From: Octopus sinensis
Taxonomy: Eukaryota
Reading direction: 5' to 3'
Length of the DNA: 26,772 nt
NCBI RefSeq assembly: GCF_006345805.1
Contig: NW_021834118.1
Span: 1-26,772 of the forward strand
The position numbers and the translations under genes were made by a program. This document shows, one piece after another, positions 9,342 through 22,250 of this stretch. Under the pieces are notes generated by a model. The model was not told the DNA's origin. It did not search any database and saw only the letters and a list, made by a program, of their open reading frames with translations. Each line of letters begins with the position of its first letter. The first letter of the stretch is position 1.

Positions 9342-10300
9342 CCTTATTTTGCTTTTCGTGTTTTGTAAAACAAGCTGACGACCATACTTCTGTTATTTGA
9401 TAGAGATACGAACATTCTAGAATTTCTAATTTCATATAAAATAATCAAGAAACTTGAATGTTTATAATGAAATCCTTATTAAATTATTCGAAGAATTACA
9501 TTAAAAGATCACTGTAGTTTGTATTATAGAAATATTCATTGCGCTGTTGTACATATACGATGACAACCCTTTCAAATACATTGGAAATTATTATGATAAA
9601 GCTTAAAGAAATATATTTCAGAAATAAATTAAATAGCCTCAATAAACATATAATTAGAAAATTCAAGTTTCTGTGGAATAATCCCCTTTTATTTCGATTG
9701 TAAGTACTTGTTGAGCAAATACATTTTAAAATTAAATGGAATTATTTGCCTCAAAGAATTGCATTTAAGAAAACCATGAAACCTTGAACGATCGTTAATT
9801 GCATTAATATTAACCATTTCAATATTAAGAATTTCGCTACCTCTTCAGTTATCATTAACAATGGAAAATTAACATCTAAACAACTGCCAAAACGCTACAA
9901 AATTTAATTGCTTTGTAAGAACAACTTGTCATTTAGATGGAATTTGCTTAGCTATTCCCAGCAGAAAATATGCAACGGTTATTATTCCATCGATAAATAT
10001 AATGCACGTTTAACGATGGATACTTGAATACCATATGTAATCAACGTAAATATACATTTCATATTCGAGTCAGAAACTTGGATACATTCTTGTCGAAAAA
10101 TATATGGAACCTAAAGCACACGAATTGAATTTTAATACCCAACGAAAATAAAAAAAGTTGCTAAAGGCTTACAGAGAAACAACTACATTTGTCAGATTTG
10201 CTTTATAAGCTGTAAAGTAATTCGGTTGCCTAATGAAGATATCCCGGTCTTAATTTAAACCTTGCTTTGTCATGCTCCCAGAGTTAAATTCGAAAGATTA

Positions 10301-10706
10301 CTTACTTACTTGTACTTGTGGCGACATTCACCCTGGGCGGGTTGAGTCGGCTTCTTCCACCACCCTCGAGACATCGCAAACTATGGCAGTGGAAGAAGTT
10401 TCGTGGGAATATGAATTTCACAAGCGGTCCCCAACAATCCCGCTTGTAGAGACATCCTGTTTGCTGCAGATTGTCCGCAGACGCAGGGAAAGAACGACCG
10501 AGGAGCCGTCGGTTGCCGAAGCAGACACTCTGAGGATTTTCACCAGAGTCTCGTCTGCCAGGGGTGTGGCCCTAATACCACTCGGTGTCAGACCAATTCG
10601 CCTTGGGTGGCCCTACCAGGAACCGAAGTTCTCGACGGCATAGCTCTGACACTACCCGTTGCAAGCGTCCCCACCACGGTGAGGAGGTGATGGATTTGGG
10701 GACGCA
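10301..10706 (-). mobile_element. Complete 406-bp non-autonomous RTE-derived retroelement with a 15-bp TSD
   Basis: Perfect direct repeat aaattcgaaagatta at 10286-10300 and 10707-10721. The minus-strand 3' end is (AAGT)n, preceded by an RTE-like terminal peptide (AMSRGWWKK, cf. A.DR..WR). The 5' ~120 nt resemble the structured RTE 5' leader (cacc...cgtggtgg...gagctatg...cctggtaggg...cccaaggc). GC content is far above the flanks. Confidence 0.85.
10585..10705 (-). ncRNA. Putative HDV-like ribozyme fold at the element's 5' end
   Basis: P1 GUCCCCA (10703-10697) / UGGGGAC (10673-10667); P3 UCA/UGG around loop CCUCCUCACCG; P4 base CUUG/CAAG; J4/2 GGCGAAU with the candidate catalytic C at 10600; weak P2 CCA/UGG. 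Confidence 0.5.
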
Positions 10707-11715
10707 AAATTCGAAAGATTAAAAGTCAAGTAAGTAAAAGAACATGAAAATACAAGCCTATTGTATGTTGCTTGCAGAATTATGATATAATAAAACAATA
10801 AAATAGTAATTGCAAAGAAATTCATATAAAGCGAAAAGAGAATTACTAATGATTTTATTTCTTACATTTTTTCGGGGGAATCACCGAGATAGGTGGATGA
10901 TTCTAGCTATTTCGATAAACATTATATTTCAAGAGAAATAAATACAAGATAAACATATTCTTTCTTGGCTTTGCACTTAGCTCTCGGGCATTATTTAAAA
11001 TATACTGGAAAGCATTTTGAAAAACTGATGTAGGGTCTACGTGTAAGTCGTGTTTAAATATGCAAACTTGTAATACGCTTATGATAAAGAGCTTGTATCT
11101 TCTTTCAACTCCTTCTGCTTTCAGCTAGAATATGAAGCCATGTTGGATCACCGCATTTAGTGCAATTTGGATTGTTTCCAGTATTATATAATCTCTGTGT
11201 GAAAAGTCTGGCTGCATACACGTTAGCATATGTCCCGTGCATACAACTGACAACGCAGTTATATTTTATTCAGTGAGTTTTATTCAACCCATGTTTACAC
11301 GTGGAATTAGCAGAATCATTATTAACTTACGATGGATCGCAGGCGAGGTGAACAAATTAGTGAGAGAGATAGACTGGCAATACTTGCAGTCTTGGGAAGA
11401 GCTATCTGAGCGGAAAATTCGGTGATGTATTCAACATCAAACTCACGTTCGGCGTCAAATAGTTGACTGACGTGGTGGTAACAGATTCGTGTAATAAATT
11501 TTGTGTTTATTTTTGTCTCATAATATATATTTTTTCGGATGCAACCATGAAGTAGCAAGTTGGACAGTACTGATCTTTTTTACCTCCTGCTACGATGTGT
11601 GTTCTTTTGGTATCTGAAAAAAGAAAAAAAAAAACATCTCCAAGCGTTCATTGAAATCCTCAGCATCTACAACTCGCGAATCTCCTGGGTTTTTCGTTCG
11701 AATGTTGAACAGTTG

Positions 11716-17382: not shown

Positions 17383-17426
17383 TTGATGTTGGTGATGATG
17401 ATGATGATGATGAGGTTGATGAAAAC

Positions 17427-17466
<40 letters not shown>

Positions 17467-18695
17467 GCGATGAAGACGATGATGACGATGATGATGACGA
17501 CGATGATGATGATGACGATGACGATGATGATGATGATGATGATGTTGATGATGATGATGATGATGAGATGATGATGATGATGATGATGATATGATGATGT
17601 TGATGATGATGATGATGTTGAAGATTACGGCGATGATTGTGATCGCGTTGATGGCGAAAATGATGATTATATTTATTTCACGCTCGTTTCGATGATAATG
17701 ATTGTGATGACAACGACGACGACGATGATGATGACTAAGATGATGCTTACGTTTATTTCATGCTCGTTACGATGATTTCAATGGCGACGAGAATGAGGAG
17801 AGCAAAGAAGTTTTGAAATGAGAATCGTTGGCGATGGCGTCGCCGATTGCGACCATCACTACCGACGCAATGGTGATGGCCATAGCAATAAGGAACATAA
17901 AGAATATGTTGTTTCTTGTTATTGACGACGATGTCGTTGATGATGATGATGATGATGATAATGATGATGGTGATGATAATGATGATGATGATAATGAAGT
18001 TGATGATGATGATGGTGATGATGATAATGAAGATGATGATGATAATGATGAAGGAGATGATGATCATGCTGGTGACAGTGGTGATGGTCATGGTGATGTT
18101 GATGATGATGATGACTAGGACGATGATGATGATGACGATGTTGATGATGGTGGTGGTGGTGGGTGCGGTGTTGTTGTTGGTGGTGGTGCGGATGATGATG
18201 GTAATGATGAAGATGATGATGGTGGTGGTGTGTGTGTGGTGATGGTGATGATCGTAATGATGATGGTGATGACTACGACGATGTTGATGATGATGATGAT
18301 GATGCTGACGATGATGATGATTATGATGTTGTTGGCGAAGGCGACGAGGAGAAGGAGAAAGACAAGGAAGAGATGTAAACGTTGCGTAAGTATTGGGTAT
18401 ATCACACTTCATGGCTTCGGAGAGCGGAATGGTGCTAATGATAAAGACGATCACGGTGTTAATGATGCTGATGGTAAGGGTGATGAGAATTAGTAGTAGT
18501 AGTAGTAGTTGCAGTAGTATAGTAGTAGTAGTGGTGGTGGTGGTGTTGGTGTTGTGGTTGTTGTTCTTGTTGGTAGTAGTAGTAGTAGTAGTAGTACTTG
18601 CGGTAGGAATAGCAGCGATAATGATATTGATGCCGATGCTGATGCTGATAAGGATGATGATGATGATGATGATGAAGATGATGATGATGATGATA

Positions 18696-18729
<34 letters not shown>

Positions 18730-18812
18730 CGGTGATGATGGTGATGATGATGACAGTGATGATGATGATGATGGTGGCGGTGGTGGTGGTGATGATGATG
18801 ATGAGGATGATA

Positions 18813-18859
<47 letters not shown>

Positions 18860-18920
18860 GATAAGCATGAGGTGACAGATTAGGAATAGGAGGAGGAGAA
18901 CTATGATGATGATGATGATG
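17383..18920. repeat. ~1.5-kb compound trinucleotide array dominated by (GAT)n, with GGT, GTT, TAG and GAC blocks
   Basis: Direct inspection. Register shifts break every long reading frame. Confidence 0.95.
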
Positions 18921-19244
18921 ACGGTGATGGAGATTGCGAATTTTAAAGTTCCTGGTCATGGCGAAGATCAAGTCATACGAATTCGATGACGATGGCAAAA
19001 ATCGCTGACGCTGACGCTGACGTTGACGCTGACGCTGACGAAGTCGAAAACGAAAAAAAAAAAAAAAAAAAGGAAAACGAAGACAACGACGAAGCTTAAC
19101 ATAAGTACAATGGCGAAGATCGTAGGACAGAAGAAATGAGCGGGAACAGGGAGAGGAACAGGAGAACAAGGGGAGGAGGAGCTATTGTAAGAGGAAGAGC
19201 AAGATTCTGCTGAAGAGAGGGCTGATGACAATGATGACGATGAT

Positions 19245-19248
19245 GACG

Positions 19249-19305
<57 letters not shown>

Positions 19306-19355
19306 GTCATTATTAATATATTATTATATTATTATTATTATTATCATTGTTATTA

Positions 19356-19392
<37 letters not shown>

Positions 19393-19514
19393 CATTATTA
19401 TTATTATTATTACCATTATTATTATTATTATCATTATTATATTTATTATCTTATTATTATTATTATTATATTATTAGTATATTAATTATTATTATCAGGT
19501 TATATCATTATATT

Positions 19515-19565
<51 letters not shown>
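19245..19565. repeat. (ATT)n microsatellite
   Basis: Direct inspection. Confidence 0.95.
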
Positions 19566-21374: not shown

Positions 21375-22250
21375 AGGGGTATCCCTTTCAAAGTGGAAAC
21401 GGTCACCACCATCCTGAAGGAATTTGAGTCGGTTGCAGGGACTAACCATCAACACCGACAAATCGATGTGTATGCAGTTGGACCGGCAGACCAGTTAAAC
21501 TGCTCGGTGTGTGGTTTAGTCCCAAACTCCAGGCTGATAAGAACTGGGACGAGGTTGCCAACAGTTTGGCAAGTTTTACCCAGAAATGGTCTGAGAGGAA
21601 GCTGTCCCTGAAAGGTCAGGCAAGGATGGCGAATGCTTATGTGGCCTCCGCTATCATTTATCGCCTGAATGTCGTGCTTTGTCCCAGTTATTGCTGGGCC
21701 CTTTTCGAGATTCTGTTATTTAAATTATTGTGGAAGGGAGGCGTTCCAATGGCCAGGCGGTCCCTCGGTTACCAACATCCTCTAAGTGGTGGGTTATGTA
21801 TCCAGTGACTCCTAACGTGCCAACACGCTCTTACGTTACGTCACATGCAACGATTACTGACCGGTGAGCGTGTGTGAGCTTCGGTTGTGGGTCTCGTCTT
21901 TCCGCAGCTCGTCTCCTCGACGGAGCTGCAGTCCTGGTTGAAGTAAAGACGTGACTGGGAGCCTGACACTTAGAATGTCATCAGGCCCACCCAGACCTCT
22001 ACCAGTCGGTGAATGGTGGATGATCTGCTTTAGAAATTTATTGAGGATTAGTGACAGCGAAGAGATACAATGTTCTTGAGTAGAATCCGGGCGCCGACAA
22101 GAACGAATCGGCTAGTCTGTTCCTGAGGACTTTCCGGTCGGGAACTATCATGGAGAACTTCCAAATGCCCTTGGCCTGGCAGCGTTGCCAGGATGTGGTG
22201 CTACGTGTTCAAGATAAACCCTACAGGCACGAATGTGCTGTCAGACGGAA
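21375..22250 (+). mobile_element. L1/Tx1-like LINE ORF2 internal fragment (late RT to zinc-binding region), decayed
   Basis: Across frameshifts: LKEFESVAG / TINTDKSMCMQL; VWFSPKLQADKNWDEV...WSERKLSLKGQARMANAYVASAIIYRL...LFKLLWKGG...GGL; ENFQMPLAW...LRVQDKPYRH. These match L1-clade features INxxKS, W..R.LSL.G...Y.L and F.W.G...GGL. Confidence 0.85.

What the first reader, a model, noticed from the sequence alone, without database searches (positions are those of the whole stretch)
10286..10721. Complete 406-bp RTE-derived mini-retroelement that starts at an HDV-like ribozyme fold
Seen in sequence: a perfect 15-bp TSD (aaattcgaaagatta), a minus-strand (AAGT)n tail and no intact ORF. The 5' end lies 2-3 nt upstream of a 7-bp helix GUCCCCA/UGGGGAC (9 bp if extended), which closes a C-rich loop bounded by UCA/UGG. 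Further downstream are CUUG/CAAG, a UUCG-capped hairpin (gaac-ttcg-gttc), GGCGAAU (the HDV J4/2 sequence), and an extra 8-bp helix GUGUCAGA/UCUGACAC. Established: RTE, R2 and ingi/L1Tc-clade LINEs carry HDV-like ribozymes that define their 5' ends; the L1Tc motif is CCA-CCUCAACG-UGG. Inference: this is a non-tRNA SINE built from an RTE 5' leader plus RTE 3' end. It would be excised from read-through transcripts by its own ribozyme and mobilised in trans. Caveats: P2 is only ~3 bp here, L3 is 3 nt longer than canonical, P1.1 could be a single pair, and an alternative pseudoknot (GGGUAGU/GCCACCC) competes.
Basis: partly seen in the sequence, partly recalled or inferred. Interest (0 to 1): 0.82.

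Follow-up and report, generated by a model that had tools for sequence, protein, structure and literature searches.

The report
Deleted RTE retroelement with ribozyme-like head
This 406-bp insert is a short, protein-less copy of an RTE-type jumping gene that keeps the parent's 5' leader, which looks like a known kind of self-cutting RNA (HDV-like ribozyme). It is an ordinary new member of a known class, and the ribozyme fold is partly broken in this copy.

Summary
The sequence observation holds. A perfect 15-bp target-site duplication (10286-10300, 10707-10721) flanks a 406-bp minus-strand element with an (ACAAGT/AAGT)n tail and no real ORF.

It is not a one-off deletion. Colinear ~390-bp copies occur in a related genome (ENA assembly ERZ21867824). 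There, a ~3.35-kb APE+RT LINE (L010) carries the same 5' 325 nt and 3' 64 nt. The element is therefore a short internally deleted element (SIDE) of an RTE-like LINE.

The 5' 165 nt match a structure model built only from the relatives (143 bits). The same model finds the 5' UTR of a distant RTE (L013), starting exactly at a 7-bp P1. L013 folds as a clean HDV-like double pseudoknot and weakly hits Rfam RF02682.

P1, the UUCG hairpin and the 8-bp helix are real. GGCGAAU is not J4/2: it is paired inside a large, conserved P4 domain. The homologous J4/2 is GCAGA (candidate catalytic C at 10557, not 10600).

In the window copy P2 (1 of 4 pairs) and P1.1 (1 of 2 pairs) are degraded, so self-cleavage of this copy is doubtful. 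HDV-like ribozymes in RTE elements, and ribozyme-bearing SIDEs, are already known.

The parts
10286..10300 (.). Target-site duplication, 3'-side copy relative to the minus-strand element (AAATTCGAAAGATTA)
   Evidence: Exact 15-mer found twice; none of 100 shuffles contained it even once
10707..10721 (.). Target-site duplication, 5'-side copy
10301..10706 (-). Whole 406-bp non-autonomous element (SIDE of an RTE-like LINE). 10706 is one extra U at the 5' junction.
   Evidence: Colinear at 73% over nt 10-406 with L006, and with six other copies. Both ends are shared with LINE L010.
10301..10358 (-). 3' module derived from the LINE 3' end, including the tail ACAAGUACAAGUAAGUAAG (10301-10319). This is the presumed recognition and priming site for the RTE reverse transcriptase.
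   Evidence: 84-87% identical to the 3' ends of L003/L004 copies and of LINE L010 (7414-7458)
10359..10539 (-). Remainder of the LINE 5' leader up to the internal deletion junction. It is non-coding in this copy.
   Evidence: Alignment to family copies and to L010 nt 166-325
10540..10705 (-). HDV-like-ribozyme-homologous domain (full match to covariance model R1)
   Evidence: cmsearch gives 143 bits, E 4e-37, model positions 1-165. The model was built without the window.
10698..10705 (-). P1 5' strand GCGUCCCC, starting 1 nt from the duplication
   Evidence: Pairs with 10665-10672. Five of 7 P1 pairs show changes on both sides across lineages.
10665..10672 (-). P1 3' strand GGGGACGC
10673..10685 (-). 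P3 (UCC/GGU, two Watson-Crick pairs) enclosing the 7-nt L3 UCACCGU
   Evidence: C-G pairs kept in 7/8 rows and a standard pair in 8/8 rows. L3 is UCAACGU in most relatives, in L013 and in a compact phage HDV-like motif.
10659..10664 (-). UU (P1.1 3' nucleotides; UG in relatives) followed by J1/4 GCAA
   Evidence: A-U pair kept and C-G pair lost in the window. The Rfam RF02682 consensus shows GGCAAC at this place.
10561..10658 (-). Enlarged P4 domain. It contains an outer stem CGGGU/ACCC(C), helix A GUGUCAGA/UCUGACAC, helix B CCGUC/GGCGA, the UUCG hairpin and a 3' side hairpin.
Evidence: Helices are 87-98% paired with compensatory changes.
10599..10618 (-). 20-nt core UGGUAGGGCCACCCAAGGCG, identical in the distant RTE LINEs L009 and L013
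10554..10558 (-). Homologue of J4/2 (GCAGA; GCUAA in relatives). The candidate catalytic C is at 10557.
   Evidence: Column homology in alignments A5/A6. C is present in 9 of 11 rows.
10549..10552 (-). Columns homologous to the P2 3' strand (GAGA here, GGGG in the family, ACAC in L013). The partner is 10686-10689 (CACC).
   Evidence: Only 1 of 4 pairs forms in the window. All 4 pairs covary between the family and L013.
10540..10544 (-). Alternative window-specific P2 3' strand GGUGA (partner UCACC, 10686-10690)
   Evidence: 5 bp in the window only. 60% of cells are paired across relatives, no better than slid controls; duplex p about 0.1.

Best explanation
**What it is.** The insert is a short internally deleted element (SIDE-type non-autonomous retrotransposon) of an RTE-clade LINE. 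It keeps the parent's first ~350 nt (5' leader) and last ~58 nt, including the (ACAAGT/AAGT)n tail. It has lost the whole endonuclease-reverse transcriptase ORF.

**How it moves (inferred).** It is copied in trans by the RTE protein through target-primed reverse transcription. This left the 15-bp target-site duplication and one extra nucleotide at the 5' junction.

**The 5' module.** Its first 165 nt are homologous to a structured domain found at the exact 5' end of related and distant RTE elements. That domain has the layout of a large HDV-like self-cleaving ribozyme:
- P1 starts at nucleotide +1.
- P3/L3 lie directly 5' of the P1 3' strand.
- A two-pair P1.1 and a GCAA linker follow.
- A ~100-nt elaborated P4 comes next.
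- It ends with G-C-N-R-A (J4/2) and a P2 pseudoknot.

**Function (inferred).** In active elements this RNA would cut itself out of read-through transcripts at +1, defining the 5' end.

**This copy.** P1, P3/L3, P4 and the J4/2 cytosine are kept. P2 and half of P1.1 are lost, so this copy or its lineage may cleave poorly or not at all.

**Shown versus inferred.** Shown: family membership, LINE derivation, homology of the domain, and covariation of the helices. Inferred: catalysis and trans-mobilisation.
For: **Insertion.** Duplication and tail confirmed.

**Family and LINE origin**
- Seven colinear copies occur in ERZ21867824, with their own target-site duplications. Four begin at the first P1 nucleotide (0-2 extra nt at the junction); two are 5'-truncated.
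- L010 is a 3.36-kb element flanked by ACTGTGTACTT. It has APE and RT similarity, and the short element's 5' 325 nt and 3' 64 nt at its ends.
- RTE affinity rests on a single APE+RT ORF of ~1000 aa, a ~3.3-kb length, a microsatellite tail at the stop codon, and relatives named 'craniofacial development protein 2'.

**Structure**
- Model R1, built from six ERZ copies only, finds the window at 143 bits. It finds L013 at 63 bits (E 2e-15), starting exactly at its P1.
- On the 8-row alignment, 88.4% of cells pair, against 35-46% when partners are slid. 22 pairs change on both sides, against 1-4 when slid and 6.2 +/- 2 in shuffles.
- P2 and P1.1 were not in the model, yet pair in 84% and 94% of cells.
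- The L013 P2 duplex beats shuffles (p about 0.009).
- L013 159-228 aligns to Rfam RF02682 (an HDV-like ribozyme) from the same +1, at E 0.39.
- The same P3/L3/UG-GCAA core sits in a compact phage motif with a 7-bp P1 and an 8-bp P2.

**Literature**
- HDV-like ribozymes cleave at the 5' junction of RTE elements (PMC3774820).
- SIDEs with such ribozymes are known for R2 and L1Tc/NARTc (PMC6765202, PMC4035085).
Against: - No cleavage was measured.
- No Rfam HDV-like model reaches E <= 10 on the window or on an ERZ copy. The L013 hit is far below the gathering score (17.9 against 44 bits).
- Only about three independent lineages carry the covariation, and most both-side changes come from L013 alone.
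- The alignment was fitted to the nested helices by the model.
- The family P2 (CCCC/GGGG) is no better than composition predicts (p 0.5-0.66). P3 has only two Watson-Crick pairs.
- In the window, P2 pairs at 1 of 4 positions and P1.1 at 1 of 2.
- The J4/2-P2 block is the most diverged part (5 of 13 nt), whereas the P4 core, which HDV-type catalysis does not need, is invariant.
- Three other RTE 5' UTRs that were fetched (L012, L014, L015) show no convincing copy of the domain.
- RTE clade assignment rests on architecture and source names, not on a phylogeny.
Confidence: 0.7

Rival explanations
1. The conserved 5' domain is a structured leader with another job, not a ribozyme. Candidate jobs are an internal promoter, an internal ribosome entry or translation element, or a binding site for the RTE protein. 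The uniform 5' ends would then come from transcription initiation at +1. The HDV-like resemblance would be partial or vestigial.
For: - The most conserved part is the 20-nt core inside P4, which HDV-type catalysis does not need.
- The window lineage keeps that core perfectly but has lost P2 and half of P1.1.
- No Rfam HDV model passes its threshold.
- The family P2 is compositionally trivial.
- Precedents exist: L1Tc Pr77 is both promoter and ribozyme, and the R2 protein binds an extension of its ribozyme (PMC4035085, PMC6765202).
Against: - P1 begins exactly at +1 and covaries in four lineages.
- P3/L3, the UG, GCAA and GCUAA all sit where the HDV-like fold requires.
- L013 has a complete 9-bp P2.
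- The two functions do not exclude each other.
Confidence: 0.2
2. One reading: J4/2 is GGCGAAU with catalytic C10600, P4 is closed by CUUG/CAAG, P3 is UCA/UGG, and P2 is a 3-bp AAU/AUU.
For: All these pairings can be drawn on the window sequence.
Against: - In relatives P3 pairs 1/3 and P4 2/4 (1/4 in L013). P2 pairs 0/3 in L013.
- C10600 sits in helix B (CCGUC/GGCGR), which is 90% paired with a compensatory change in L013.
- The stretch lies inside a helix-enclosed domain that is shared with L013.
Confidence: 0.03
3. It is a classical Pol III SINE with a head derived from a small RNA (tRNA, 5S or 7SL), joined to an RTE tail.
For: The size (~400 bp), the RTE-type tail and the absence of an ORF fit a SINE. 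Weak A/B-box-like strings can be imagined by eye.
Against: - ARAGORN finds no tRNA-like gene.
- Rfam finds no tRNA, 5S or 7SL match.
- The whole head is contiguous with the 5' end of a full-length LINE (L010).
Confidence: 0.02
4. It is a one-off internal deletion of a single LINE copy, or a chance repeat, with no family.
For: There is no second copy in the 26.8-kb window.
Against: Colinear copies with the same junction, each with its own target-site duplication, occur in a related genome, and about 37 antisense-ORF fragments of the family are on record.
Confidence: 0.01

Closest known systems
[quoted passage not shown] 2011, as cited in PMC3774820; the mosquito drz-Agam-2 family, PMC4908430)
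   Same: The ribozyme-type fold starts at the first nucleotide of the element, so cleavage would define the 5' end. It is followed closely by the APE+RT ORF in the full-length elements (L009, L013).
   Different: The peripheral domain here is a ~100-nt P4 with a sequence-invariant core. In drz-Agam-2 the large domain is in J1/2. There is no match to the Rfam drz-Agam or other HDV-like models at threshold. Activity is untested.
R2 SIDEs and L1Tc-derived NARTc/RIME/SIDER (short internally deleted elements that keep the parent's 5' ribozyme; PMC6765202, PMC4035085)
   Same: An internal deletion removes the ORF. The 5' ribozyme-bearing leader and the 3' end are retained, and mobilisation is in trans by the parent's protein.
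   Different: The parent is an RTE-like LINE with non-specific APE insertion, a target-site duplication and a microsatellite tail. In this copy the ribozyme core is partly degraded.
Rfam RF02682 (HDV-like ribozyme of Faecalibacterium prausnitzii) and compact phage HDV-like/theta-type motifs (PMC10879173; loci L021/L024/L026)
   Same: Same order of parts and near-identical core letters: a 7-bp P1, CC-UC(N)ACGU-GG for P3/L3, GCAA after P1, and G-C-N-A-A before P2.
   Different: Those are minimal ribozymes with a short P4. Here P4 is greatly enlarged, which is probably why the Rfam models score low.
Twister-variant ribozymes at the 5' end of Perere-3, an RTE of Schistosoma mansoni (PMC8501958)
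   Same: A self-cleaving RNA at the 5' end of an RTE element next to the target-site duplication. A 'CCCAAG' string occurs in both.
   Different: It is a different ribozyme class. The twister loops and pseudoknots cannot be placed on the right strands here, and no twister model matches.

Membership tests
HDV-like self-cleaving ribozyme | A P1 helix of 6-7 bp whose first nucleotide is the cleavage site, here the element's 5' end (PMC4908430, PMC3774820) | tested here: met
   The window has 8 bp, GCGUCCCC/GGGGACGC, starting 1 nt from the duplication. Five of 7 pairs change on both sides across lineages. Copies in relatives start at P1 +1.
HDV-like self-cleaving ribozyme | A P3 hairpin with a short L3 immediately 5' of the P1 3' strand | tested here: met
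   UCC-UCACCGU-GGU. The two inner pairs are standard in 7/8 and 8/8 rows; the outer pair is mismatched except in L013 (GCC/GGC) and L011 (U-A).
HDV-like self-cleaving ribozyme | P1.1 formed by L3 and the nucleotides just after P1 | tested here: inconclusive
   CA/UG gives two pairs in most relatives and L013. The window has UU, so one pair. One-pair P1.1 occurs in known members (PMC4908430: 'one or two base-pairs').
HDV-like self-cleaving ribozyme | A P2 pseudoknot between the strand 5' of P3 and the strand 3' of J4/2, usually 5 bp or more (PMC3774820) | tested here: not met
   Window: 1 of 4 pairs at the homologous columns. A window-only 5-bp alternative lies 10 nt further 3' and is not conserved. 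L013 has 9 bp with one bulge (p about 0.009). The ERZ family has 4 bp, which is compositionally trivial.
HDV-like self-cleaving ribozyme | A catalytic cytosine at the first position of J4/2 (PMC10879173) | tested here: inconclusive
   A C is present at the homologous position (10557) in the window and in 9 of 11 aligned rows. Its role is only positional inference.
HDV-like self-cleaving ribozyme | Match to a curated covariance model of the family | tested here: not met
   No HDV-like Rfam hit on the window at E <= 10. L013 hits RF02682 at 17.9 bits, E 0.39, against a gathering score of 44.
HDV-like self-cleaving ribozyme | Mg2+-dependent self-scission that is abolished by mutating the catalytic C to U | not testable with these tools
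   This needs an in-vitro transcription and cleavage assay.
SIDE (short internally deleted element) of an RTE-clade LINE | Both termini colinear with a full-length autonomous-type LINE, with the ORF deleted | tested here: met
   L010 (a related genome) carries the 5' 325 nt and 3' 64 nt around APE+RT coding remnants. The parent in the source genome itself could not be searched.
SIDE (short internally deleted element) of an RTE-clade LINE | The parent belongs to the RTE clade: a single APE+RT ORF, ~3.3 kb, a very short 3' UTR and a short-tandem-repeat tail | tested here: met
   Architecture of L009, L010, L012 and L013. Relatives are named 'craniofacial development protein 2' by their sources. 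No clade phylogeny was made.
SIDE (short internally deleted element) of an RTE-clade LINE | Several copies with the same internal junction, each with its own target-site duplication | tested here: met
   Met in the related genome. Not testable in the source genome.
tRNA-derived or small-RNA-derived SINE | A head homologous to tRNA, 5S or 7SL RNA with an internal Pol III promoter | tested here: not met
   ARAGORN and Rfam find nothing. The head is the LINE leader.
Twister / T-variant ribozyme of RTE (Perere-3) | Twister loops L1, L2 and L4 and pseudoknots T1 and T2 on the proper strands | tested here: not met
   No twister or twister-sister Rfam hit at E <= 10. Manual mapping against the table in PMC8501958 puts the GGG partner on the wrong strand.

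The most novel reading that the evidence does not exclude
The enlarged P4 domain, with its 20-nt invariant core UGGUAGGGCCACCCAAGGCG next to a covarying hairpin, may be a distinct and so far undescribed functional RNA module of RTE retrotransposons. It could be the 5' binding site of the RTE protein or a translation-initiation element, grafted into an HDV-like ribozyme. It is conserved between RTE lineages whose proteins are only ~30% identical. It is kept perfectly even in a SIDE lineage (the window) that has let the catalytic P2/P1.1 decay. If so, it is this module, rather than self-cleavage, that non-autonomous copies must retain.
Probability: 0.3. Interest if true: 0.55.

Novelty: new member of a known kind. 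Interest (0 to 1): 0.35.

Why it matters
- **If the fold is active,** it adds an RTE-derived SIDE family to the few non-autonomous retroelements known to carry their parent's HDV-like ribozyme. It also shows a ribozyme architecture (small J1/2, very large conserved P4) that current Rfam models miss, so such elements are probably under-annotated in invertebrate genomes.
- **Practical value.** The corrected map tells an experimenter which cytosine to mutate (10557, not 10600). It also shows that the window copy is a natural P2-defective variant.
- **The open question.** The more interesting point is why the P4 core is invariant across distant RTE lineages.
- **Otherwise** this is an ordinary transposon insertion in a microsatellite-rich animal genome.

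Tried and rejected
- **Rfam on the window.** Gathering and E <= 10 scans gave nothing relevant.
- **Pattern scans of public collections.**
  - The metagenome scan gave one useful locus (L009) and two chance bacterial hits.
  - The viral and GTDB scans for the core gave nothing.
  - Protein-guided scans with the L009 ORF gave nothing.
- **A loose HDV-like descriptor of my own.** It returned 7-58 hits per ~500 nt in every sequence, so it has no discriminating power and was dropped.
- **Thermodynamic stability.** The window z-score is -0.38, which is uninformative.
- **Twister reading of 'CCCAAG'.** Rejected.
- **tRNA-like or primer-binding-site reading of the core.** No tRNA genes occur in any locus and no support was found, so it was dropped.
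- **An alternative window P2 (UCACC/GGUGA).** It is not conserved.
- **MAFFT alignment including L013.** It misaligned the 3' part, so a model-based alignment was used instead.
- **Other RTE 5' UTRs.**
  - L012 and L014 show no clear domain.
  - L015 gives only a weak hit, E 1.1.
- **Flank check.** The empty-site flank is not repeated in the related loci.
- **Source organism.** It could not be identified. The window shares only this element with the ERZ21867824 loci.
- **Ruminski 2011 and Webb 2009.** These papers are not held in the library.
Full report
**1. The observation**

The 15-mer AAATTCGAAAGATTA occurs exactly twice in the window, at 10286-10300 and 10707-10721. It did not occur in any of 100 dinucleotide-preserving shuffles. 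Between the two copies lie 406 bp (10301-10706).

The minus strand of this insert ends in ACAAGUACAAGUAAGUAAG. It begins with one extra U followed by GCGUCCCC.

There is no sense-strand ORF. The only ORF of 90 aa or more is antisense, starts in the flank and has no Pfam match. The window holds no second copy. It looks like a microsatellite-rich animal genome of roughly 24-44% GC per kb.

Two measures give no support. The nested folding energy of the first 166 nt is no better than shuffles (z = -0.38). Rfam reports nothing relevant, even at E <= 10.

**2. It is a family, and it derives from a LINE**

The antisense ORF was used only as a search handle. It retrieved six, and then about 37, spurious 'proteins', nearly all from ENA metagenome assemblies. 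All eight that were traced to DNA lie in assembly ERZ21867824. These are called with TGA read as Trp, which is a gene-calling artefact.

The DNA behind eight of them was fetched (L001-L006, L010, L011). Each holds one element that is 73-82% identical to the window element. L006 aligns in a single block over nt 10-406. The internal junction is therefore shared.

The copies have their own target-site duplications:
- L003: ATATATATACAAA
- L004: TACTTGATATCATA
- L002: TATAT(T/A)AGAAAT
- L001: TCC(T/A)CAGATT
- L010: ACTGTGTACTT

Four of the seven short copies begin at the same nucleotide, with 0-2 extra bases (L004 only after a one-base shift of the helix register). L005 and L006 are 5'-truncated.

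L010 is the key locus. It is a 3.36-kb element flanked by its duplication. It carries the first 325 nt of the short element at its 5' end and the last 64 nt at its 3' end. Between them lie endonuclease and reverse-transcriptase coding remnants, now broken by stops. L011 is a longer deletion variant.

The short elements are therefore internal-deletion derivatives, or SIDEs, of this LINE. The window shares nothing else with these loci, so it comes from a different but related genome.

**3. RTE affinity**

Several features fit the RTE clade:
- The related intact LINE in L009 has one 1064-aa ORF with Exo_endo_phos and RVT_1 domains.
- Its microsatellite tail, (TTGA)n, begins at the stop codon.
- L012, the closest intact relative of L010 at about 40% amino-acid identity, ends in (AAAGT/AAGT)n. 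This resembles the window element's tail.
- Database relatives are about 1000 aa long on contigs of about 3.0-3.6 kb. Several are named 'craniofacial development protein 2' by their sources. From my own knowledge, this name is usually given to RTE/BovB-derived ORFs.

I did not build a clade phylogeny.

**4. The 5' domain**

A 21-nt pattern from the best-conserved stretch was scanned against public collections. It found one eukaryote-like metagenome contig, L009. Its 71%-identical relative L013 was then fetched.

Both carry, just upstream of the RTE ORF, a hairpin followed by the identical 20-mer UGGUAGGGCCACCCAAGGCG. The hairpin stem differs between lineages but still pairs: GGAGU/ACUCC in L009 and L013, against GGAAC/GUUCC in the ERZ family (AGAAC/GUUCC in the window).

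L013 can be folded as a textbook HDV-like double pseudoknot:

| Part | L013 sequence |
|---|---|
| P1 | CUUGCUC / GAGCAAG |
| P2 | GACGG(U)GUGU / ACACCCGUC |
| P3 | GCC / GGC |
| L3 | UCAACGU |
| P1.1 | CA / UG |
| Linker after P1.1 | ACAA |
| P4 | long, closed by UGGAU / AUCCA |
| J4/2 | G-CUAAA |

The ERZ family has the same order of parts:

| Part | ERZ family sequence |
|---|---|
| P1 | CUGUCC(C) / (A)GGACGG and variants |
| P3 | (U)CC / GG(C) |
| L3 | UCAACGU |
| P1.1 3' nucleotides | UG |
| Linker | GCAA |
| P4 outer stem | CGGGU / ACCCG |
| J4/2 | G-CUAAA |
| P2 | CCCC / GGGG |

**5. Tests of that fold**

I built a covariance model, R1, from the six ERZ copies alone. It contained only the nested helices. 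The results were:
- The window at 10540-10705 scores 143 bits (E 4e-37) over the full model.
- L013 at 159-305 scores 63 bits (E 2e-15). The match begins exactly at the proposed +1.
- L009 gives a partial match, because its 5' part is rearranged.

The model-made alignment of eight sequences was then scored:

| Measure | Observed | Partners slid 1-3 columns | Shuffles |
|---|---|---|---|
| Cells forming standard pairs | 88.4% | 35-46% | 81.5% |
| Pairs changed on both sides | 22 | 1-4 | 6.2 +/- 2.0 |

P1 has five of seven pairs changed on both sides. P2 and P1.1 were not part of the model, yet they pair in 84% and 94% of cells. All four P2 columns covary between the family (C-G four times) and L013 (GUGU/ACAC).

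Three further results bear on the fold:
- The L013 P2 duplex is better than shuffles (p about 0.009). The family's CCCC/GGGG is not (p 0.5-0.66).
- A permissive Rfam scan of L013 aligns RF02682, a bacterial HDV-like ribozyme, to 159-228 from the same +1. It matches P1, P3, L3 and the GCAA linker at E 0.39. This is far below the gathering score, plausibly because the model expects a short P4.
- A pattern for the shared core also picked up phage loci L021, L024 and L026. There the same GCC-UCAACGU-GGC ... UG-GCAA core sits in a compact motif. That motif has a 7-bp P1 with a terminal G-U pair, an 8-bp P2 (CAACAACA/UGUUGUUG) and G-CAAA before P2. Most of the other hits to that pattern are consistent with chance.

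There are caveats:
- Only about three independent lineages carry the covariation.
- L013 supplies most of the double changes.
- The alignment leans towards the nested helices because the model placed them.
- Three other RTE 5' UTRs (L012, L014, L015) show no convincing copy of the domain.

**6.

Right:
- The P1 helix at the terminus
- The UUCG-capped hairpin
- The 'extra' 8-bp helix GUGUCAGA/UCUGACAC, which covaries (C-G in relatives, U-A here)

Wrong:
- P3 as UCA/UGG pairs in only 1 of 3 positions in relatives.
- P4 closed by CUUG/CAAG pairs in 2 of 4 (1 of 4 in L013).
- P2 as AAU/AUU pairs in 0 of 3 in L013.
- GGCGAAU is not J4/2. It forms the 3' strand of helix B (CCGUC/GGCGR), which is 90% paired with a compensatory change in L013. 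It lies deep inside the P4 domain.

By homology J4/2 is GCAGA (10554-10558), with the candidate catalytic C at 10557.

**7. State of the window copy**

Kept:
- P1, at 8 bp
- P3 and L3, with one L3 change (UCACCGU)
- The GCAA linker
- All P4 helices and the invariant core
- The J4/2 cytosine in a C-A-G-A context

Lost:
- One of the two P1.1 pairs (UU in place of UG)
- Three of the four P2 pairs (CACC opposite GAGA)

A window-specific 5-bp alternative P2 (UCACC/GGUGA) lies 10 nt further 3'. It is not conserved in relatives and is only marginally better than shuffles.

The J4/2-P2 block is the most diverged part of the domain (5 of 13 nt), whereas the P4 core is unchanged. Because the duplication is perfect, the insertion is recent. 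These differences probably belonged to its master copy.

My estimates:

| Proposition | Probability |
|---|---|
| The L013-type domain is a true ribozyme | about 0.75 |
| The ERZ family ancestor was a true ribozyme | about 0.6-0.65 |
| The window copy itself cleaves efficiently | about 0.3 |

**8. Mechanism**

Shown:
- Insertion with a 15-bp duplication
- A tail whose UAA can pair with the TTA at the nick
- An element built from a LINE 5' leader and a LINE 3' end

Inferred from established knowledge of non-LTR elements (PMC3774820, PMC6765202, PMC4035085, PMC4908430):
- The element is transcribed, possibly by read-through.
- The 5' domain cleaves at +1, or transcription starts there.
- The RTE protein, supplied in trans, recognises the 3' module and tail, nicks the target and primes reverse transcription.
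- Second-strand synthesis adds the odd extra base at the 5' junction.

**9. Comparison with what is known, and novelty**

These precedents exist:
- HDV-like ribozymes cutting at the 5' junction of RTE elements are already reported (PMC3774820, citing Ruminski 2011).
- SIDEs that keep such ribozymes are known for R2 and for L1Tc/ingi (PMC6765202, PMC4035085).
- Another RTE element, Perere-3, uses a twister variant instead (PMC8501958).

This finding is therefore a new member of a known kind.

The unusual feature is the architecture. J1/2 is short, and P4 is about 100 nt long with a 20-nt core that is invariant between RTE lineages whose proteins are about 30% identical. No Rfam model recognises it. 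That core may be a separate functional module, which is the most novel reading that the evidence leaves open.

**10. Verdict**

The RTE-derived mini-element and the ribozyme-type 5' end hold. The core assignment is wrong, and activity of this copy is doubtful.
- Interest is moderate to low.

Noticed in passing
window 10599-10618 (minus strand); L009 3376-3395 (minus strand); L013 ~245-264: The 20-nt string UGGUAGGGCCACCCAAGGCG, preceded by a covarying 5-bp hairpin, is identical in RTE LINEs whose ORFs are only ~30% identical. It contains a GGCC palindrome and a 'GGGCCACC' run. Rfam has no family for it.
   Followed up: partly
L021 738-763, L024 2069-2094, L026 3632-3657 (all minus strand; IMG/VR phage contigs): A compact, complete-looking HDV-like motif lies between a tRNA gene and a ROOL RNA. 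It has P1 GGAGUGC/GCACUCU, P3 GCC/GGC, L3 UCAACGU and P2 CAACAACA/UGUUGUUG. No Rfam ribozyme model calls it at the gathering score.
   Followed up: partly
window 10722-10740 (+ strand): Right after the duplication, the + strand reads AAAGTCAAGTAAGTAAAAG. This resembles the element's own tail but lies on the opposite strand. It may be a preferred target context or a remnant of an older tail. The other copies examined do not show it.
   Followed up: partly
window 21509-21808 (+ strand): A 99-aa ORF (WSERKLSLKGQ...YRLNV...) looks by eye like the region downstream of the RT domain in LINEs. It has no Pfam hit and only a chance-level tblastn match to the L009 ORF.
   Followed up: no
window 17384-19565 and throughout: Very long trinucleotide arrays occur: (TGA)n of ~945 bp, (GAT)n and (ATT)n. 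There are also dozens of (TA)n, (TG)n and (ATGT)n tracts. The arrays produce long spurious ORFs of I, T, H and D runs.
   Followed up: no
L001-L006, L010, L011 (ENA assembly ERZ21867824): Gene calls on these eukaryote-like contigs read TGA as Trp. As a result, antisense reading frames of the retroelement are stored as 'proteins' in the public protein collection. This was useful as a search handle, but they are not real genes.
   Followed up: yes
L015 607-690 (+ strand): There is a weak model hit (9 bits, E 1.1) about 40 nt upstream of another RTE ORF. It has UAAAAUC...CCCUCCAAGU...UGGGCA and a short P4-like hairpin. It could be a minimal, diverged version of the same domain, or noise.
   Followed up: no
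L009 3400-3520 (minus strand) compared with L013 150-200: L009 has an intact 1064-aa ORF, but its ribozyme-like domain lacks the P1 5' strand, P2 5' strand and L3, which are replaced by unrelated AT-rich sequence. It is an ORF-intact copy with a truncated or rearranged 5' head.
   Followed up: partly
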